A stretch of 64,000 bases of DNA, taken from assembly GCF_006345805.1 (NCBI RefSeq), contig NC_043013.1, positions 35,650,001 to 35,714,000 of the forward strand, given 5' to 3'. The stretch's first letter is position 1. The number at the start of each line of letters is the position of its first letter. The notes beneath the pieces were generated by a model. It was not told where the DNA came from. It ran no database searches and was given only the letters and a program-made list of their open reading frames with translations. Below are positions 1,531 to 61,302 of this stretch, piece by piece. The stretch is from Octopus sinensis (taxonomy: Eukaryota). The translations under genes were made by a program, and so were the position numbers.

Positions 1531-1594
1531 ATGTATATATATATATATATACATACATACTCACACACACACATACACACATATACATACATAT

Positions 1595-1808
1595 AGTTAA
1601 TCCAAACAAGAAAGCACAAAAAAACACCACAATGCGAGGACGTGGAACGAATATAGTATTATTGGACGCTCAGGAAAGAAGGAAAGAAGGAGGATTTAAC
1701 GTTTCGAGCGGAGCTCTTCGTCGGAAACATAGGAGAAGGAAAGATCCAGAGAAGGGAAGACAGAGGAAAAAAAAATCGCCAATGGTACACACGCGGTCAC
1801 ATTTTGAA
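1595..1808 (-). mobile_element. Short hammerhead-bearing repeat, CCGACGA family (second copy at about 18715-18918)
   Basis: Shares TATGTTTCCGACGAAGAGCTCCGCTCGAAACGT and downstream TTCCTGAGCG...TTTGGATTAA with the 18.8-kb copy; TA/TG microsatellite flanks. Confidence 0.75.
1694..1728 (-). ncRNA. Minimal type I hammerhead motif (U4>C variant)
   Basis: Minus strand GTTT-CCGACGA-A-GAGC/TCC/GCTC-GAAA-CG-TT-AAAT; stem III palindrome ACGU. Confidence 0.65.
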
Positions 1809-4126: not shown

Positions 4127-4622
4127 TATACATATATACATATACGTATATATATACATGTATATGTCTATACACATATATGTGTATATATATATATATA
4201 TAGGCACACACATATATATATATACATGTATATGTATATACACATATACATACATATAAACATATATAAATATACATATACATGCATATATACAAGTATA
4301 CACGCACACACATACTCACACACACACACTCACACACCTATATATCTATGTATATATATTCATACATATACATATGCATACATACAGGCGCACAGAAACA
4401 TAAATGCACACATACACACATACATTCATATGTATGCACGTACATATATACATTCATATATACAAACATACATGTATACATACATACATGCATAGAGATA
4501 TATATATAGAGAGAGAGGGATGAGGGAGTAAGAGGGATGGAGGGAGAGAGAGGGAAGGGGAGAGAGAGAGGTTTACATATATATGTATATATATATATAT
4601 ATATTATTTATTATATAGAAGG

Positions 4623-4674
4623 AGCTTCTACAGGAACTAGAACTGTTTCATTCAAGAGAAATCTTCAGGAAGCT
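4623..4674 (-). ncRNA. Type I hammerhead ribozyme motif (left arm)
   Basis: Minus strand AGCTTC-CTGAAGA-T-TTC/TCTT/GAA-T-GAAA-CAG/9-nt loop/CTG-TA-GAAGCT. Confidence 0.75.
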
Positions 4675-4806
4675 AGTTAACAAGAATTGTATTGGCATTT
4701 ATACATTTAGGCAGGTTAAAGGGGTGTTGTGGGGGACTTTTTGGGGGTAGGCATACCCCTTTAAACCTGCCTAAATGTATAAATGCCAATACAATTCTTG
4801 TTAACT

Positions 4807-4856
4807 AGCTTCCTGAAGATTTCTCTTGAAGAAACAGTTCTAGTCCTGTAGAAGCT
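4807..4856 (+). ncRNA. Type I hammerhead ribozyme motif (right arm)
   Basis: Stem I AGCTTC/GAAGCT (6 bp); CTGAAGA; short stem II; GAAA; stem III ACAG/CTGT; GUA site after 4850. Confidence 0.8.
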
Positions 4857-5043
4857 CCTTTATAATAAATAATTTTACTCTGCTATGTATTGAGTACCTT
4901 ATTTACTGTGGTTAACCCCGAATCAACCCGGGACCTACATATATATATAATATATATATATATATATGTATATATATGTATATATATATACATATATATA
5001 TATATACATATATATAATATATATATATAATATATATATATAT

Positions 5044-7919: not shown

Positions 7920-8575
7920 TGAAAAGCAGGGTTGACCTCAGCAGAATTTGAACTCAGAATGTAAAGATGTACAAAATGCTTCTAATGAATCTTTTCTACT
8001 GGAAGCACCAAGGCCTCAAACTTGAGGGAATGGATTAAATTGATCATATCGACCCCAGTGCGTAACTGTTACTTATTTAAATGATCCCAAAAGGATGAAG
8101 GGCAAAGTCAACCTCAGTGGAATTTGAACTCAGAATGTAATGACAGGTGAAATACTGCTAAGTATTTTGTCCAGCATGCTAACGATTCTGTCAGCTCATT
8201 GCCTTATGACGGTGAAACATTGACTTTGAATTTTGACACAAATGTTCAACTGATATTTATTTCATTAACCCTGGAAGGATGAAAGGCAAAGTCAATCTTG
8301 GTGGAATTTGAACAGATGGACAAAATGTCATTGAGAATTTTTCCCAGTGTGCTAGCGATTCTGTCAGCTCACTTCCAGCCTTATGATGAGGCCTCAAATT
8401 CAGAGGAAGGACATAGTGGTTATATCAATTCCAGTATTTCTCCTTTATTGAATCTGGTAGAATGAAAGGTAAAGCTGACCTCAATGAAATTTGAACTCAG
8501 AATATAAAGACCCATGTCTAAATTCCACAAGAGATTTTTTTTCTCTGACACGCTAATGATTCTGTCAATCCACTG
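7920..8575 (-). mobile_element. Tandem cluster of about 4-5 SINE family B copies
   Basis: Repeated GAATTTGAACTCAGAATG and GGATGAAAGGCAAAGTC blocks. Confidence 0.85.
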
Positions 8576-18098: not shown

Positions 18099-18791
18099 AG
18101 TATATACGCGCCGCATGCACCTCGCTCTTGGACCCGACGAGACCTCCCGCTCGTTCCTGGGACCGTCGCTTGTCGTTGGGTTTTCCCACGCCCGTCTCCG
18201 CGGGACCACTCTTCCATCTTCCCCTCAGCTGGAGTCCTTTTTCCTTAACCCCCCCCCTTTTTCGTTACACACACGCGCACACATATACACACATTGCTTA
18301 AATATATACATTACTCTTACACACATTCAATTTACTCGCCATTAATACTACCACGACACTGGACACACACACACACTACTACTCAACACACGCTGGCACG
18401 CTACATACGCCCCCACCCCTTCCCCTCCCTCCCTTCCTCCTTCCTTCTTTTTCTTACTACTGACCATTGTCTGCTATGCCGACCACTGTCTCGCCCTACC
18501 TCACACGCCTACACACAGACGCACACACTAACACATACATATATTTTTTGTTTTTTTATCTCGCCTCACACACACACATACACACACGCACACGCACACA
18601 CTCACACATACACACACATCTGTTGCGTTACCAACCTTGTCTCCACTCTTTTCCCTTTAAAAACCTACTTTGCTCTTGTTATCGTAAACTTCCGCCTTTC
18701 ACCTTGTGTAACTCGTAAACACCAGTCGTTTTTTTTCTCTATCCCTGTTGCCCGCTTTGGGATCTTTCTTTCCTCTCTCTTCCTTCTTTAT

Positions 18792-18826
18792 GTTTCCGAC
18801 GAAGAGCTCCGCTCGAAACGTCATAC
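18792..18826 (+). ncRNA. Minimal type I hammerhead motif (U4>C variant)
   Basis: GTTT-CCGACGA-A-GAGC/TCC/GCTC-GAAA-CG-TC-ATAC; GUC site after 18822. Confidence 0.65.
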
Positions 18827-18913
18827 CTCCCTGCTTCCATTTCCTGAGCGCCTATTAATAATAATACTGTAATTGTTCCATTGTTGTTGTTTTTTTGTTT
18901 TCCCGTTTGGATT

Positions 18914-18954
<41 letters not shown>

Positions 18955-23173: not shown

Positions 23174-24443
23174 TATATGTATATCTAAAACATTTACATG
23201 AATATCCTGCATACCTATGTGCATACACTGTACTTGATGCACCTCAGCAGCTCGTATATATTTTATTAATTAAATTATCTTGGAGACATTCTGTTCTTCT
23301 AGGCATACCATTTTTTTAGGCATTCCAACAACAATAAACATACATACAGAGAGGAGAAAAATTCATGGAATTAGAAATTCATTTCATTTTTTTTTTTTAA
23401 TTTATTCGTACTATTCTTATGCTAATTCTATTTTTTTGCTCATTTACATATGCGTTGTATATTCTCAGATATGTGTACATGTATGTATGTGCGTGGATGC
23501 ATGATTGTGTGCATGTATGTAAGTATGTTTGTACGTAGGTATGTTTTTATTTATGTATGTATGTAATTATGTGTGTATATTTGTATTTATGTATGTATGT
23601 ATGTTTGTATGTAGGTATGAATGCTTGTATGCATGAATGTTTGTATGTATTTTTGTATGTATTTTTGTATGTATGTTTGTATGTATGTATGTATGAATGT
23701 ATGCATGTGAGTTTTTGCGTATGTTTGCATGTACATTCTCTTCTTGATTGGAAGACTTTTTTTGAGTTGATTTTGTCTGGCAGCATTCTTGTGCAAAGAT
23801 TCTAAAGAAAAGATAACAAATTTTAAAAGTAGGTGTTTTCTTGTGAGTCTTTTTTCATGGGGGGTGGGGGTGCAGGCAGTCGTGTTTGCAATAACAACCT
23901 TTAAATTTTAAAAAGGTTTGTCAGATTCCTCTTGGAATCTTACATGATGTCTAACATGGTTATCAATGATACCCCATGAAATACATGGCCACAGCATTTC
24001 TTCAAGAATCCAAATTCGATGATAATGCATAACTGGATTGGATTGCCTGTGTTCAGTCCACTGCAAGACCAAGGCCTCAGCATGTTCTCTTCACCGACCA
24101 TGGTTTGTTGTGGAGGCCATGAAGTTGAGCTTGAGATTATTACTGGTTTTGTGAGTGTGTAGTGGTTTACGTAGCTAAATAGTTGAATGATCTCCCTTGC
24201 ATGAAAGATTATAGAGTAACCTCCCTTTTCTAAGTTTCTTGAAGCATCTATGTCATGAGACGTGATTCTTAATTATTCAAGAAGCTTACCATTTCTCTTG
24301 GAAGTTTCTAGAATGTCTAACGCTCCATTAATAAAAACAGATTGTCAACCCTGCACTTCGCTTCTTATTTGTTCTTAACCTATATATTACTTTATTTACA
24401 TTATTTACATTTGACGGATATTTGTCCTCATCTTGTTTGTTGT

Positions 24444-24491
24444 TAACACAACATTTCAGCTGATATACTCTCCAGCCTTCATCAGGTGTCA
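24444..24491 (-). ncRNA. Minimal type I hammerhead motif
   Basis: TGACAC-CTGATGA-A-GGCTG/GAGAGTATAT/CAGCT-GAAA-TG-TT-GTGTTA; 6-bp stem I. Confidence 0.75.
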
Positions 24492-24548
24492 TGGGGAAAT
24501 TTCGAACCTGGGTTCTCATTCCTAAGGTACTACTTGATGTTATTATTA

Positions 24549-27422: not shown

Positions 27423-27995
27423 AGGCGGCAAGCTGACAGAAACGTTAGTATGCCCGGCGAAATGCATAGCGGTATTTCGTCTGTCTTTACATTCTGAGTT
27501 CAAATTCCGCCAAGGTCGACTTTGCCTCTCATCTTCTGGGGTCGATAAATTAAGTACTGGTTGCGTACTAGGGTTGATCTAATCGACTGGTCCCTACCCC
27601 CAAAATTTCGGGCCTTGTGCCTAGAGTAGAAAAGAATCGTTAGCACTCTGGATGAAATGCTTAGGGGTATTTTGTCTACCACTACATTTTGAGTTCGATA
27701 AATTAAGTACTAGTTGCGTACTGGGGTCGATCTAGTCAACTGGCCCCCTCCCCCAAAATTTCGGGCCTTGTGCCTAGAGTAGAAAAGAATTGTTAGCACT
27801 CTGGGTGAAATGCTCAGTGGTATTTCATCTGCCACTACATTCTGAGTTTGAATTCCGCTGAGCTCAACTTTGCCTGTCATTCCTTTCATGGTTGATAAAT
27901 TAAGTGCTAGGGACACACTGGGGTTGATGAAATCAACTTATCCACTCTCCACAAATTTCAGGCCTTGTACTTTTATTAGAAAGGATAATTGAATA
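27423..27995 (+). mobile_element. Head-to-tail array of three SINE family B units
   Basis: Repeated GTTAGCAC...GATAAATTAAGT...CCCCAAAATTTCGGGCCTTGTGCCTAGAGTAGAAAAGAAT. Confidence 0.85.
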
Positions 27996-28089: not shown

Positions 28090-28310
28090 ATTCTTTTCCA
28101 CTCTAGGCACAAGACTCGAATTTTTTGGGGGAGGGGGGGCAGTCGATTAGATCGACCCCAGTACGCAACTGGTACTTAATTTATCGACCCCCCAAAAGGA
28201 TGAAAGACAAAGTCGACCTCAGCGGAATTTGAACTCGGAATATAGAAACAGATGAAACACCACTAAGAATTTTGCCCGGTGTGCTAACGTTTCTGCCAGT
28301 TTGCCGCCTG
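28090..28310 (-). mobile_element. SINE family B copy
   Basis: Reverse complement of the 27423 unit. Confidence 0.85.
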
Positions 28311-32799: not shown

Positions 32800-33030
32800 A
32801 GGGCGGTGAGCTGGCAGAAACGGTAGCACACCGAGCGAAATGCGCAGCCGTATTTCGTCTGTCGTTACGTTTCGAGTTCAAATTCCGCCGAGGTTGACCT
32901 TGCTTTTCATCCTTTCAGGGTCGATAAATAAAGTACCAGTTACGCACTGGGGTCGATCTAATCGACTTAATCCCTTCATCTGTCCTTGTTTGTCCCCTCT
33001 ATGTTTAGCCCCTTGTGGGTAGTAAAGAAA
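32800..33030 (+). mobile_element. SINE family B, full-length, CpG-rich
   Basis: GGCGGTGAGCTGGCAGAAACGG head through to the GTGGGTAGTAAAGAAAT tail. Confidence 0.9.
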
Positions 33031-33088
33031 TATATATATATATATACATATATATATACACATATATATTATACATATATATATAACA

Positions 33089-34736: not shown

Positions 34737-34940
34737 AAGGCTGCAAGCTGACAGAAACATTAGCATGCCAGGTGAAATGCTTAGCGGTATTTCATCTGCT
34801 GCTACGTTCTGAGTTCAAATTCCGCCAAGGTCGACTTTGCCTTTCATCCTATCAGGGTCGATAAATTAAGTACCAGTTATGCACTGGGGTCAATGTAATC
34901 GACTTAATCCCTTTGTCTTGTGGGCAATAAAGAAATAAGA
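34737..34940 (+). mobile_element. SINE family B copy
   Basis: Family B head, core and tail. Confidence 0.85.
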
Positions 34941-49289: not shown

Positions 49290-49540
49290 TTATCATTATC
49301 ATCATCATCATTTAGCGTCCACTTTTCATGCTAGCATGGGTTGGACGGTTCAACTGGGGTCTAGGAAGCCAGAAGGCTGCACCAGGCCCAGTCTGGTCTG
49401 GCAATGTTTCTACAGCTGGATGCCCTTCCTAATGCCAACCACTCTGTGAGTGTAGTGGGTGCTTTTTACGTGCCAACCACACAGGTGTCAGATGGGGCTG
49501 GCAAACGTCCACGGTTGGATGGTGCTTTTTACGTGCCACC

Positions 49541-49545
<5 letters not shown>
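49290..49545 (-). mobile_element. RTE LINE 3'-UTR fragment
   Basis: Same terminal sequence and (CAT)n tail. Confidence 0.85.
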
Positions 49546-49578
<33 letters not shown>

Positions 49579-49890
49579 CACATAAATTGGAATAATTACT
49601 TTGAAGCATTGTGTAGAATATATTGTATAAAGGATCGTGGGTAAGGCCAGAACAATGCAAAATAAATGCAAAGCAAATCGCAAGAAAACAAATATATGAA
49701 TTAATGTAGACTTACCTTGCATTCAGTATTTTGGGGTTTTGACACCATTTTCAAGAAATTAACGTATGTTGCTGATGTGTTTGTGTGTGAGTGTATGTAG
49801 TGAACATGCATGGAAAGGTGTTGTTACAGCAACCTTCTAGCTTCCTGTTGATATTTGGTTTCCTTTGGTGATTGAGGATGGCCTCAGAGA

Positions 49891-50136
49891 TTCTATGTTA
49901 TATACGAGATCATCTGTGACAAATGTGGTGCATCCTACATAGGAAGCACAACAAGAAAACTGCATATACACATTAAGGATCACATGCAGGCAGACACTTC
50001 CTTGAAGAAACATCTACAGAAATGCCAGCTCCAAGAATTCACAATCCACATCAGGGCAACACAGCAGAACAGGAGCAACCTTAGAATCACTGAGGTCATT
50101 CTCATACACCAAAGGAAACCGAATATCAACAACTGA
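49891..50136 (+). pseudogene. Penelope GIY-YIG endonuclease fragment (not in the ORF track)
   Basis: Open frame FYVIYEIICDKCGASYIGSTTRKLHIHIKDH...NLRITEVILIHQRKPNINN*. Confidence 0.9.
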
Positions 50137-50171
50137 AGAGAGTTACAGGAAGCTAGCTAGTTGCTATAGCT

Positions 50172-50403
50172 ATTTCTTTACTACCCACAAGGGGCTAAAC
50201 ATAGAGGGGAAAAAACAAGGACAGACAAATGGATTAAGTTGGTTATATCGACCCCAGTGCGTAACTGGTACTTAATTTATTGACCCTGAAAGGATGAAAG
50301 GTAAAGTCGACCTCGACGGAATTTGAACTCAGAACGTAATGCCAGACGAAATATGGCTACGCATTTCGCCCAGTGTGCTAACATTTCTGCCAGCTCGCCG
50401 CCT
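50172..50403 (-). mobile_element. SINE family B inserted in the Penelope arm
   Basis: Full family B copy interrupting the inverted-repeat alignment. Confidence 0.9.
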
Positions 50404-50453
50404 AAAGCAACACTTTTCCATTCATGCACATGCACATTGGCAACATTTGTTAA

Positions 50454-50491
50454 TTTCTTGAAAATGGGGTCATAACCCCGAAATATTGAAT
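50454..50491 (+). ncRNA. Minimal hammerhead, U3-A8 covariant, in the Penelope pLTR
   Basis: TTTC-TTGAAAA-T-GGGGT/CATA/ACCCC-GAAA-TA-TT-GAAT; stem III palindrome AUAU; decayed mirror copy at 49721-49759 (-). Confidence 0.7.
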
Positions 50492-50761
50492 GCAAGGTAA
50501 GTCTGTATTAATTAATATATTTATTTTCTTTTGATTTACTTTGCATTTATTTTACATTGCTCTTGCCTAACTGTCCACTCAAGGAAACACATAGCAAATG
50601 ATCTACAAGCACTCAAGCAAACTGAATCCTCACGTTGTTCCATTTGCCGAAAGGTTTGCAAGGCAAAAGAGATACATTCCTGTCTATAGAATATGATTAA
50701 TACTTTATTTTACTGAACCCTTATTTGTGGTTCATGACAAGGAAATCCATCATATATATGC

Positions 50762-50940
50762 ATAGATCGTTAGCCACTACACACATTTTTTTTGCTCTCC
50801 TTGTTTTTTCTGTGTCCCTCTCTGTAGAAGAGCATAGGCTCGAAACGTAAAAGACTTTTTCTATTCCTGAGTGTTATACTAGTACATCTGTTTGTTTTGT
50901 ACACCACCTGTCTTTGTCTTTTGTTTTTTTCATAAACTCT

Positions 50941-50943
<3 letters not shown>
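50762..50943 (+). mobile_element. Short hammerhead-like element (CTGTAGA family) with (TA)n tail
   Basis: Architecture like the CCGACGA family, including TTCCTGAG downstream of the motif. Confidence 0.6.
50818..50853 (+). ncRNA. Hammerhead-like motif, A6>U variant
   Basis: CTCT-CTGTAGA-A-GAGC/ATAG/GCTC-GAAA-CG-TA-AAAG. Confidence 0.55.
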
Positions 50944-50983
<40 letters not shown>

Positions 50984-61079: not shown

Positions 61080-61302
61080 TATTTCTTTACTACCCACAAA
61101 GGTCTAAACACAGAGGGGACAAACAAGGACAGACAATTGGATTAAGTCGATTATATCGACCCCAGTGTTAACTGGTACTTACTTAATCACCCCAAAAGGA
61201 TGAAAGGCAAAGTCGACCTTGGCAGAATTTGAACTCAGAACATAGTGGTAGACGAAATACCGCTAAGCATTTCGCCTGGTGTACTAACGTTTCTGCCAGC
61301 TG
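61080..61302 (-). mobile_element. SINE family B with 13-bp target-site duplication
   Basis: ACATCAAGTTTCT at 61067-61079 and 61303-61315. Confidence 0.9.

What the first reader, a model, noticed from the sequence alone, without database searches (positions are those of the whole stretch)
49643..50568. Penelope GIY-YIG foldback ties the hammerheads to a protein-coding parent; U3-A8 covariant plus splice donor
Seen: an 81-codon GIY-YIG frame missed by the ORF track lies between about 250-bp inverted arms. The arm downstream of the ORF contains a minimal hammerhead whose core is UUGAAAA (U3-A8 compensatory pair, present in both arms), followed 9 nt after the cleavage site by AAG|GTAAGT (50497). 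Established: Penelope-like elements encode GIY-YIG, form inverted pLTR structures, carry hammerheads and can retain introns. Inference: Penelope elements are the likely source and mobiliser of the other hammerhead elements here.
Basis: partly seen in the sequence, partly recalled or inferred. Interest (0 to 1): 0.85.

Follow-up and report, generated by a model that had tools for sequence, protein, structure and literature searches.

The report
Dead Penelope retrotransposon relic with hammerhead
This is the decayed tail end of a Penelope-like retrotransposon, inserted as two head-to-head truncated copies; it carries the small hammerhead ribozyme motif already known from such elements, so it is real but ordinary.

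Summary
Window 49618-50571 is a head-to-head pair of 5'-truncated copies of one Penelope-like element (PLE).

- **Left copy:** an inverted 255-nt 3' end (49641-49895) plus a 23-nt or longer "tail".
- **Right copy:** a sense copy (49896-50571) that keeps only the 81-codon GIY-YIG endonuclease frame and the 3' UTR. A tRNA-type SINE (50165-50408) splits it.
- **Hammerhead:** the right arm holds a complete minimal hammerhead (50455-50490) with a UUGAAAA core (U3-A8). It has every published PLE min-HHR feature. It is the only descriptor hit in 64 kb (chance 0.01-0.03).
- **Relatives:** seven of nine related PLE contigs carry the same motif design outside the ORF, six of them on the sense strand.

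Caveats:
- The left-arm copy is broken (G12>A, U16.1>C, one helix II mismatch).
- G12 is present only in the right arm, so its ancestral state is ambiguous.
- The AAG|GTAAGT donor occurs at chance frequency. No acceptor lies within the arm, and its use is untested.
- This copy is dead: no RT, no start codon, a premature stop, and arms 16% diverged.
- The window's other hammerhead-like family (three ~200-nt copies) has a PLE-type motif. It shares no sequence with this element.

All of these features are already published, so interest is low.

The parts
49618..49640 (-). 3' tail extension of the inverted copy. It is present at the left end only, and its true outer limit is unknown (at most about 49591, where the microsatellite begins).
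   Evidence: The last 28 nt of the independent copy L001 (CTTACCCACGATCCTTTATACAATATAT) are 100% identical to window 49645-49618 (reverse complement), against 77% identity elsewhere. The right arm diverges at 50572. An optional 30-40 bp tail at one end is a PLE signature (PMC8557442, PMC11167929).
49641..49895 (-). Left arm. This is an inverted, 5'-truncated copy of the PLE 3' end, made of the last ~17 endonuclease codons plus the 3' UTR/pLTR.
   Evidence: Inverted repeats I1 and I2; blastn E=9e-44 and 3e-12; gapped alignment to the right arm with the SINE removed.
49725..49754 (-). Degenerate copy of the minimal hammerhead: UUGAAAAUGGUGUCAAAACCCCAAAAUACU.
   Evidence: Differs from the right-arm motif by G12>A, U16.1>C, one helix II mismatch and one loop change. 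The covariance model scores it 25.3 bits, E=0.003.
49710..49718 (-). Mirror copy of the AAG|GTAAGT string.
49891..50136 (+). GIY-YIG (CCHH-type) endonuclease frame of 81 codons plus a premature stop. It has no start codon and no RT upstream.
   Evidence: tblastn with 18 PLE proteins matches only 49888-50157, and several alignments read through the stop at 50134. Homologues continue about 10 residues beyond INN.
49896..50571 (+). Sense-oriented 5'-truncated PLE copy. Its 5' truncation point, at the start of the GIY motif, abuts the inverted copy head to head.
   Evidence: Junction at 49895/49896. Collinear with L001 positions 1208-1662 at 77-78% identity.
50165..50408 (-). tRNA-derived SINE inserted into the right arm after the duplication, including an approximate 5-nt target duplication (tatag/taaag).
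   Evidence: Absent from the left arm. At least 12 related copies occur elsewhere in the window at 72-88% identity. Edges shown.
50455..50490 (+). Minimal type-I hammerhead motif. Helix I is 50455-57 paired with 50488-90 (3 bp). The core is U3 U4 G5 A6 A7 A8 A9 at 50458-64, followed by a bulged U at 50465. Helix II is 50466-70 paired with 50475-79 (5 bp, loop CAUA). G12-A15.1 is 50480-83, the palindromic UA is 50484-85, and U16.1 U17 is 50486-87. The predicted cleavage site is 50487|50488.
   Evidence: Only descriptor hit in the window. Top covariance model hit at 43 bits, though it was a training member. The minimum free energy fold of 50450-50496 is helix I plus helix II at -8.7 kcal/mol. 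The features match PMC4209133.
50494..50502 (+). Consensus 5' splice-site string AAG|GTAAGT, 9 nt after the predicted cleavage site.
   Evidence: Conserved as AAGGTAAG in L001. Chance-level frequency. No AG between it and the end of the arm.

Best explanation
The locus is a dead insertion relic of a canonical Penelope-like retrotransposon (RT followed by a C-terminal GIY-YIG endonuclease).

**Structure (shown).** It consists of two 5'-truncated copies joined head to head.
- One is an inverted 255-nt 3' end with the optional PLE tail.
- The other is a sense copy that keeps only the endonuclease domain and the 3' UTR.

**How it formed (inferred).** This is the configuration PLE integration commonly leaves. 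The purified PLE enzyme cleaves and extends both DNA strands, and reverse transcription starts at two internal sites, which produces the tail (literature).

**The hammerhead (shown as sequence, inferred as function).** The 3' UTR carries the minimal type-I hammerhead typical of metazoan PLE pseudo-LTRs, here in the U3-A8 core version. In an active master element arranged in tandem, two such motifs would pair through the palindromic A15.1-U-A-U16.1 segment. This would form helix III in trans and cut the multimeric transcript after U17.

**State of this copy.**
- After insertion the copy decayed neutrally. The arms have diverged 16% with heavy CpG loss.
- A SINE inserted into the right arm.
- The left hammerhead lost three essential features.
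- The ORF acquired a premature stop.
- No function is expected from this copy.
- The AAG|GTAAGT string may mark a pLTR intron donor of the family, but this is unproven.
For: **PLE identity.**
- 441 HMMER hits, with the long ones being RVT_1 plus C-terminal GIY-YIG.
- The CCHH and catalytic columns are retained.
- The sister copy L001 has RT (YIDD region) and endonuclease in collinear order.
- tblastn places the only PLE coding remnant of the window at 49888-50157.

**Foldback.**
- The literature describes an inverted 5'-truncated copy adjacent to the unit and a one-sided 30-40 bp tail (PMC8557442; PMC11167929).
- The tail is shared 28/28 nt with L001 at the left end only.
- A (TA)n(CA)n microsatellite lies about 30-50 nt outside the left end.

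**Hammerhead.**
- It is the single descriptor hit in 128 kb of strand, with chance 0 to 0.03.
[quoted passage not shown] The U3-A8 variant is known in Schistosoma Cercyon.
- Related PLE contigs L002, L003 (two motifs), L004, L006 (two motifs), L007, L008 and L011 all carry the same design outside the ORF, each with a bulged nucleotide after A9 (U in all but L006, where it is G). All but L002 are on the sense strand.
- Helix II covaries among them.

**Decay.**
- CpG observed/expected is 0.41. R and L hold 2-3 CpGs against 14 in L001.
- The SINE insertion is shown.
Against: - Rfam hammerhead models give no hit, even at E<=10 on 1.6 kb. Those models describe canonical hammerheads with helix III, however.
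- Helix I is only 3 bp.
- G12 is G only in the right arm. It is A in the left arm and in L001 (which reads AUCA in place of GAAA). Simple parsimony therefore makes the right-arm GAAA box a derived change. Two parallel CpG>CpA losses are the alternative.
- Only three copies of this family could be recovered, so no family consensus exists.
- No cleavage or expression data are available.
Confidence: 0.88

Rival explanations
1. The hammerhead-like string is not a descendant of a ribozyme. Under this reading the family's 3' UTR ancestrally read ...CCCCAAAAUAU..., and a single A>G change in the right arm completed the GAAA box by chance.
For: G12 is A in the left arm and in L001, and L001 reads AUCA in place of GAAA. 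Helix I has only 3 bp. No Rfam hit was found.
Against: More than 20 other constrained positions fit the published min-HHR design, and the motif lies at the homologous position of min-HHRs in related PLEs. The site is a CpG in a sequence where CpG observed/expected is 0.41 and the window copies have lost most of the CpGs that L001 keeps, so two parallel CpG>CpA losses are plausible. Chance expectation for the remaining pattern is at most 0.03 per window.
Confidence: 0.15
2. The inverted arms arose by a later local inverted duplication or palindrome formation in the host genome, not during PLE integration.
For: The arms are 16% diverged. No target-site duplication could be identified. With one locus, the timing cannot be separated from the insertion itself.
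Against: The arm ends coincide with the element's 3' end, and the left arm carries the element's own tail. The junction is an exact head-to-head join at a 5' truncation point. This layout is the standard PLE insertion structure (PMC8557442), and the PLE enzyme extends both strands in vitro (PMC11167929).
Confidence: 0.1
3. The locus is functional today. It might be a domesticated GIY-YIG gene, an active self-cleaving RNA coupled to a used splice donor, or a hairpin RNA source.
For: The 81-codon frame has no internal stop and keeps all 12 invariant residues. The right-arm motif is intact and its minimum free energy fold is hammerhead-like. The 12-nt donor block is identical in all three copies.
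Against: There is no start codon, no RT, and the stop is about 10 codons premature. The arms diverge at a neutral-looking 16% with CpG decay, and a SINE sits inside the arm. An open frame over 81 codons at about 8% decay is not unusual. The donor occurs at chance frequency and no AG follows it within the arm.
Confidence: 0.04

Closest known systems
[quoted passage not shown] 2021, PMC8557442)
   Same: C-terminal GIY-YIG endonuclease with the CCHH motif; RT upstream in the sister copy L001; strong 5' truncation; an inverted 5'-truncated copy joined to the unit; an optional tail at one end; a hammerhead in the 3' UTR/pLTR; a microsatellite next to the insertion.
   Different: This copy has no RT, no 5' UTR and no tandem partner. 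The clade could not be assigned because the linker and RT are missing. The copy is old and decayed.
Minimal hammerheads of metazoan PLEs, including the U3-A8 variant of Schistosoma mansoni Cercyon (Cervera & De la Pena 2014, PMC4209133)
   Same: Type-I topology without helix III or loop 3; an extra nucleotide between A9 and G10.1; a G10.1-C11.1 pair; a palindromic 15.2-16.2 that would allow dimeric helix III; U3-A8 in place of C3-G8; paired motifs on opposite strands 100-700 bp apart.
   Different: Helix I is 3 bp (4-5 bp is typical, 2 bp in D. virilis). Helix II is 5 bp (7-8 bp in Schistosoma). It belongs to a different host and PLE family. Activity has not been tested, and published min-HHRs cleave poorly in vitro.
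pLTR/5'-UTR introns of Penelope (D. virilis, 75 bp) and Chlamys-3_cRei (Arkhipova et al. 2003, as cited in PMC8557442 and PMC4209133)
   Same: A consensus donor lies in the pLTR close to the hammerhead. [quoted passage not shown]
   Different: [quoted passage not shown] Here a donor lies 9 nt 3' of the cleavage site. There is no acceptor, no transcript evidence, and no comparably strong donor after the motif in the related PLE contigs.
Animal non-LTR retrozymes (Cervera & De la Pena 2020, PMC7229834; Li et al. 2026 preprint, 10.64898/2026.07.22.740005)
   Same: Hammerhead-bearing non-coding elements proposed to be PLE derivatives or passengers. The window's three ~200-nt elements carry a PLE-type motif.
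   Different: Retrozymes are tandem 170-400 nt repeats with canonical, efficient type-I hammerheads. Neither the foldback nor the short family is tandem, and neither matches Rfam hammerhead models.

Membership tests
Penelope-like element (canonical EN+) | C-terminal GIY-YIG endonuclease with the CCHH Zn-finger-like motif | tested here: met
   441 HMMER hits. C10, C13, H26, H32 and the Y, G, E, N catalytic columns are retained. Pfam GIY-YIG alone is below cutoff (E=0.004).
Penelope-like element (canonical EN+) | PLE/TERT-like reverse transcriptase upstream of the endonuclease in the same ORF | tested here: not met
   Absent from the window copy, as tblastn finds only 49888-50157. This is expected for a 5'-truncated copy. 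The sister copy L001 has RT and endonuclease in collinear order, and homologous proteins carry RVT_1. The family therefore meets the feature but this copy does not.
Penelope-like element (canonical EN+) | Pseudo-LTRs, meaning partial tandem or inverted 5'-truncated copies flanking the unit | tested here: met
   Inverted 255-nt copy joined head to head. Layout described in PMC8557442.
Penelope-like element (canonical EN+) | [quoted passage not shown] | tested here: inconclusive
   A 23-nt extension beyond the arm is shared 100% with L001 at the left end only. Its full length is unknown because the L001 contig ends there.
Penelope-like element (canonical EN+) | Hammerhead motif in the pLTR | tested here: met
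   50455-50490. The same arrangement occurs in 7 of 9 related contigs.
Penelope-like element (canonical EN+) | Retained spliceosomal intron | not testable with these tools
   Only a donor-like 9-mer is present. There is no acceptor in the fragment and no transcript data.
Minimal PLE hammerhead (min-HHR) | Core boxes C3U4G5A6N7G8A9 (or U3...A8) and G12A13A14, with a U16.1-H17 cleavage site | tested here: met
   Right arm: UUGAAAA ... GAAA ... UU. Left arm: not met, as it reads AAAA and C16.1.
Minimal PLE hammerhead (min-HHR) | Unpaired nucleotide between A9 and 10.1, and a G10.1-C11.1 pair | tested here: met
   U at 50465; G50466 pairs with C50479. The same bulged U is seen in L002, L003, L004, L007, L008 and L011.
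Minimal PLE hammerhead (min-HHR) | No loop 3, with a palindromic 15.2-16.2 that allows a dimeric helix III | tested here: met
   A15.1-U-A-U16.1 reads AUAU.
Minimal PLE hammerhead (min-HHR) | Helix I of about 4-5 bp | tested here: inconclusive
   Only 3 bp (UUC/GAA). D. virilis has 2 bp (PMC4209133). The minimum free energy fold still forms it.
Minimal PLE hammerhead (min-HHR) | Self-cleavage | not testable with these tools
   Needs an in vitro transcription assay of dimeric constructs.
Canonical hammerhead families of Rfam (types I, II, III, HH9, HH10) | Match to a covariance model at the gathering score | tested here: not met
   No hammerhead hit in the window at the gathering score, nor at E<=10 in 49300-50900.
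Non-LTR retrozyme | Short tandem repeats, each with a canonical type-I hammerhead | tested here: not met
   No tandem arrangement and no canonical hammerhead. The short family occurs as three dispersed single copies.

The most novel reading that the evidence does not exclude
In this PLE family the U3-A8 minimal hammerhead and the perfect 5' splice site 9 nt downstream form one conserved processing switch in the pLTR. Ribozyme cleavage (leaving an uncapped 5' end 9 nt from the donor) and splicing of a pLTR-to-body intron would be mutually exclusive fates of the tandem transcript. The 12-nt donor block and the 5' half of the ribozyme are the best-conserved stretches among the three copies, apart from the 28-nt tail shared by L and L001. 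The evidence does not exclude this reading.
Probability: 0.08. Interest if true: 0.5.

Novelty: new member of a known kind. Interest (0 to 1): 0.18.

Why it matters
It matters little beyond annotation. The locus shows that a PLE family in this genome uses the U3-A8 version of the minimal hammerhead, previously reported for a flatworm PLE. It also gives a clean textbook example of the head-to-head, one-sided-tail insertion structure. The window's short hammerhead-like elements carry a C4 core variant that is also seen next to full PLE ORFs (L006, L011). This fits the published view that dispersed minimal hammerheads are PLE debris or PLE passengers. No open question becomes newly testable.

Tried and rejected
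- **Rfam cmscan.** The whole window at gathering score gave nothing. The region at E<=10 gave no hammerhead. The whole window at E<=10 was swamped by (TA)n pseudo-miRNA hits and was uninformative.
- **First hammerhead scan.** It required a helix III hairpin and no bulge, so it missed the motif and found only a weak string at 4803-4862. I replaced it with a descriptor taken from PMC4209133.
- **Word-index protein search with the 86-aa peptide.** No candidate was found. With the two-sequence alignment it returned only P0001.
- **More copies of the family.** Two metagenome DNA pattern scans gave nothing, or two unrelated chance matches. Look-ups of the window's own 50-aa ORF and of P0160 found nothing on record. 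The sample accession of L001 does not appear in the paper library, so the source organism stays unidentified.
- **Covariance model.** A model built from four min-HHRs recovered both arms, but it was too weak to separate other degenerate motifs from noise; all others scored E>=0.6.
- **Sequence link to the short family or to related PLE contigs.** blastn found none.
- **Domesticated gene.** Considered and rejected because the frame has no start codon, no RT and a premature stop.
- **4603-4873 palindrome as a hammerhead element.** Rejected because helix II is only 3 weak pairs, it lacks G10.1-C11.1 and it has no Rfam hit.

Full report
**What is at the coordinates**

The region reads as described.
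- Frame 49891-50133 encodes 81 codons, FYVIYEIICDKCGASYIGSTTRKLHIHIKDH...ITEVILIHQRKPNINN, followed by a stop.
- The only ORF with a start codon in this frame is 50 aa, so a 60-aa ORF list misses it.
- Two inverted-repeat blocks flank and overlap it. 49641-49793 pairs with 50419-50571 (153 nt, 84%). 49846-49895 pairs with 50082-50131 (50 nt, 88%). blastn E-values are 9e-44 and 3e-12.
- With the intervening 50165-50408 removed, the two blocks merge into one alignment. This gives a 255-nt left arm.
- The removed piece is a tRNA-type SINE with at least a dozen other copies in the window. It inserted into the right arm after the duplication.
- The last 17 codons of the frame lie inside the right arm. 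The unique centre is therefore only 49896-50081.

**The protein frame is a PLE endonuclease**

- Pfam GIY-YIG is sub-threshold (E=0.004), and the word-index search found nothing.
- HMMER against 1.84 billion representatives gave 441 hits at E<=1e-3. The long hits (850-1160 aa) match at their C-termini and carry RVT_1 with or without GIY-YIG. This is the PLE architecture.
- All 12 invariant columns of a 39-sequence alignment, including the C..C...H...H motif and the catalytic E and N, are present in the window peptide.
- Homologues continue about 10 residues after INN. tblastn alignments read through the stop at 50134, so the stop is premature.
- tblastn with 18 PLE proteins finds no other PLE coding remnant in the 64 kb.
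- The closest relative, P0001 (68% identity), lies on a 1685-bp Logan contig, L001. That contig holds degenerate RT and endonuclease in collinear order plus the same 3' UTR, at 77-78% identity to the window. The family is therefore a genuine RT-EN PLE. The window copy is a 5'-truncated fragment.

**The foldback is a standard PLE insertion structure**

- The literature describes strong 5' truncation.
- It also describes an inverted 5'-truncated copy abutting the unit, and an optional 30-40 bp tail at one end (PMC8557442).
- The purified anole PLE enzyme cleaves and extends both strands. It initiates reverse transcription at two internal sites that delimit the tail (PMC11167929).
- Here the sense copy is truncated exactly at the GIY motif and joined head to head to the inverted copy at 49895/49896.
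- The left arm continues beyond the arm end with CCACGATCCTTTATACAATATAT. Together with the last 5 nt of the arm, this 28-nt terminal stretch is identical to the last 28 nt of L001, although the rest is only 77% identical. The right arm lacks this extension.
- A (TA)n(CA)n microsatellite lies about 30-50 nt outside the left end. This is in line with the reported microsatellite bias.

**The hammerhead**

Rfam finds no hammerhead, and my first canonical scan missed the motif. Cervera & De la Pena 2014 (PMC4209133) define the metazoan PLE min-HHR by several features:
- no helix III or loop 3;
- an extra nucleotide between A9 and 10.1;
- a G10.1-C11.1 pair;
- a palindromic 15.2-16.2 that allows a dimeric helix III.

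They also report a U3-A8 core variant in Schistosoma Cercyon, and paired motifs on opposite strands 100-700 bp apart.

A descriptor with these features hits the window exactly once, at 50458-50487: uuc-UUGAAAA-u-GGGGU-caua-ACCCC-GAAA-UA-UU|gaa.
- The strict form gave 0 hits in 200 first-order Markov simulations.
- The relaxed form gave a mean of 0.03 per 64 kb.
- The form with free positions 3-4 gave 0.01.
- The minimum free energy fold of 50450-50496 is helix I plus helix II at -8.7 kcal/mol. The left-arm version folds differently at -3.0 kcal/mol.

I fetched nine contigs encoding related PLE proteins. Seven carry a motif of the same design outside the ORF, each with a bulged nucleotide after A9 (U in all but L006, where it is G):
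- L003, on both sides of the ORF;
- L004, 184 nt after the stop;
- L007, 310 nt after the stop;
- L008, 68 nt before the start;
- L011, 226 nt after the stop, with a 7-bp helix I;
- L006, in both pLTRs of a tandem array;
- L002, in inverted orientation.

All but L002 are on the sense strand.

Of the remaining two, L005 has only 48 nt of 3' flank and L012 shows none. Helix II covaries among these motifs. Full-length relatives therefore do carry the motif.

**Caveats on the hammerhead**

- The left-arm copy (49725-49754, minus strand) keeps UUGAAAA but has G12>A, U16.1>C and a helix II mismatch.
- L001 keeps UUGAAAU and helix II but reads AUCA in place of GAAA.
- In the three-way alignment G12 is G only in the right arm. 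Parsimony would make it derived.
- The site is a CpG. The window's CpG observed/expected ratio is 0.41, and the window copies hold 2-3 CpGs where L001 holds 14. Two parallel CpG>CpA losses are therefore plausible.
- By a rough estimate of my own, the two histories have similar likelihoods. The homologous position and the more than 20 other fitting positions favour a true ribozyme ancestor at about 0.85.
- U3 and A8 are shared by all three copies, so the pair is ancestral to this subfamily. Whether it is catalytically competent is untested. Published min-HHRs cleave poorly even as dimers, and cleavage was not needed for PLE insertion in vitro.

**The splice donor**

- AAG|GTAAGT is at 50494-50502 and mirrored at 49710-49718. 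L001 has AAGGTAAGC.
- These two related copies are the only occurrences of the 9-mer in the window. About 0.8 is expected from base composition, so the string is not above chance.
- No AG follows it within either arm.
- None of the related PLE contigs has a comparably strong donor after the cleavage site.
- Introns in the pLTR or 5' UTR are known for Penelope and Chlamys-3_cRei. [quoted passage not shown] The idea is legitimate, but this truncated copy cannot test it.

**The other hammerheads in the window**

- Relaxing core positions 3-4 and searching for the 3' half revealed a ~200-nt family with three dispersed copies: 1586-1800 (minus), 18703-18926 (plus) and 50740-50947 (plus).
- Copies A and B read CCGACGA-a-GAGC-ucc-GCUC-GAAA-CG-U(U/C)|a. 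Copy C reads CUGUAGA-a-GAGC-auag-GCUC-GAAA-CG-UA|a.
- Each copy ends at a (TA)n or (TG)n microsatellite.
- The C4 core variant recurs next to bona fide PLE ORFs: L011 has CCGAAGA and L006 has UCGAAGA. The motif design is therefore PLE-type.
- blastn finds no similarity between this family and the foldback arms or any fetched PLE contig. A parent, if any, is a different PLE lineage.
- The simplest reading is that these are heavily 5'-truncated PLE 3' ends, or passengers of such a lineage. Cervera & De la Pena proposed exactly this for dispersed single min-HHRs.
- PLEs as mobilisers of hammerhead-bearing short elements is also a published hypothesis (PMC7229834; 2026 preprint).

**Verdict**

The locus is a decayed, non-autonomous relic of a known element type, and it carries a known ribozyme variant. 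It is a new member of a known kind and of low interest.

Noticed in passing
window 1586-1800 (-), 18703-18926 (+), 50740-50947 (+): A ~200-nt dispersed family has three copies, each ending at a (TA)n or (TG)n microsatellite. All carry a PLE-type minimal hammerhead-like motif with non-consensus cores: CCGACGA in two copies (C at position 4) and CUGUAGA in the third (U at position 6). All three share helix II GAGC/GCUC and GAAACGU-H. The third copy lies about 170 nt to the right of the foldback.
   Followed up: partly
L011 1896-1924; L006 861-890 and 4111-4140: Bona fide PLE contigs carry min-HHR-like motifs with C at core position 4: CCGAAGA in L011 and UCGAAGA in L006. This suggests a recurrent natural core variant in some PLE lineages. 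L006 is a 3250-bp tandem array at 99.9% identity.
   Followed up: partly
window 4603-4873: A 270-nt near-perfect palindrome (87% between arms) looks like a MITE or foldback element. Each arm contains a weak type-I hammerhead-like string: AGCUUC-CUGAAGA-...-GAAA-...-UA|GAAGCU. Helix II is only 3 weak pairs, and there is no Rfam hit at E<=10.
   Followed up: partly
window 24441-24493 (-): A CUGAUGA...GAAAUGUU| string has a 5-bp helix I and a 4-bp GCUG/CAGC helix II, but extra nucleotides on both sides of helix II. It lies next to a tRNA-like GGTTCGAAAT segment and a long (TAA)n run. The covariance model scores it E=0.64, which is chance level.
   Followed up: no
window, e.g. 32802-33038, 61080-61301, 34738-34918, 8029-8197, 27423-27588, 28141-28309: A tRNA-derived SINE (B-box-like GAGTTCAAATTCC) is present in at least 12 copies at 72-88% identity. 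One copy is inserted into the right arm of the foldback.
   Followed up: no
whole window: The sequence is 36% G+C with a CpG observed/expected ratio of 0.41 and a TpG+CpA excess of 1.35. It has very many (TA)n and (TG)n microsatellites, which flood permissive Rfam scans with pseudo-miRNA hits. This is an animal-type, methylation-depleted genome. The organism was not identified.
   Followed up: no
L001 1658-1685 and window 49618-49645: The terminal 28 nt are 100% identical between two copies that are otherwise 77% identical. This is consistent with a constrained tail or RT-initiation region in PLE masters, or with an assembly effect in the Logan contig.
   Followed up: partly
L002 3024-3052 (-): An inverted min-HHR with core UUGAUGA (a U3·G8 wobble) lies about 950 nt upstream of an endonuclease-only PLE fragment. 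This is another example of the inverted arrangement.
   Followed up: no
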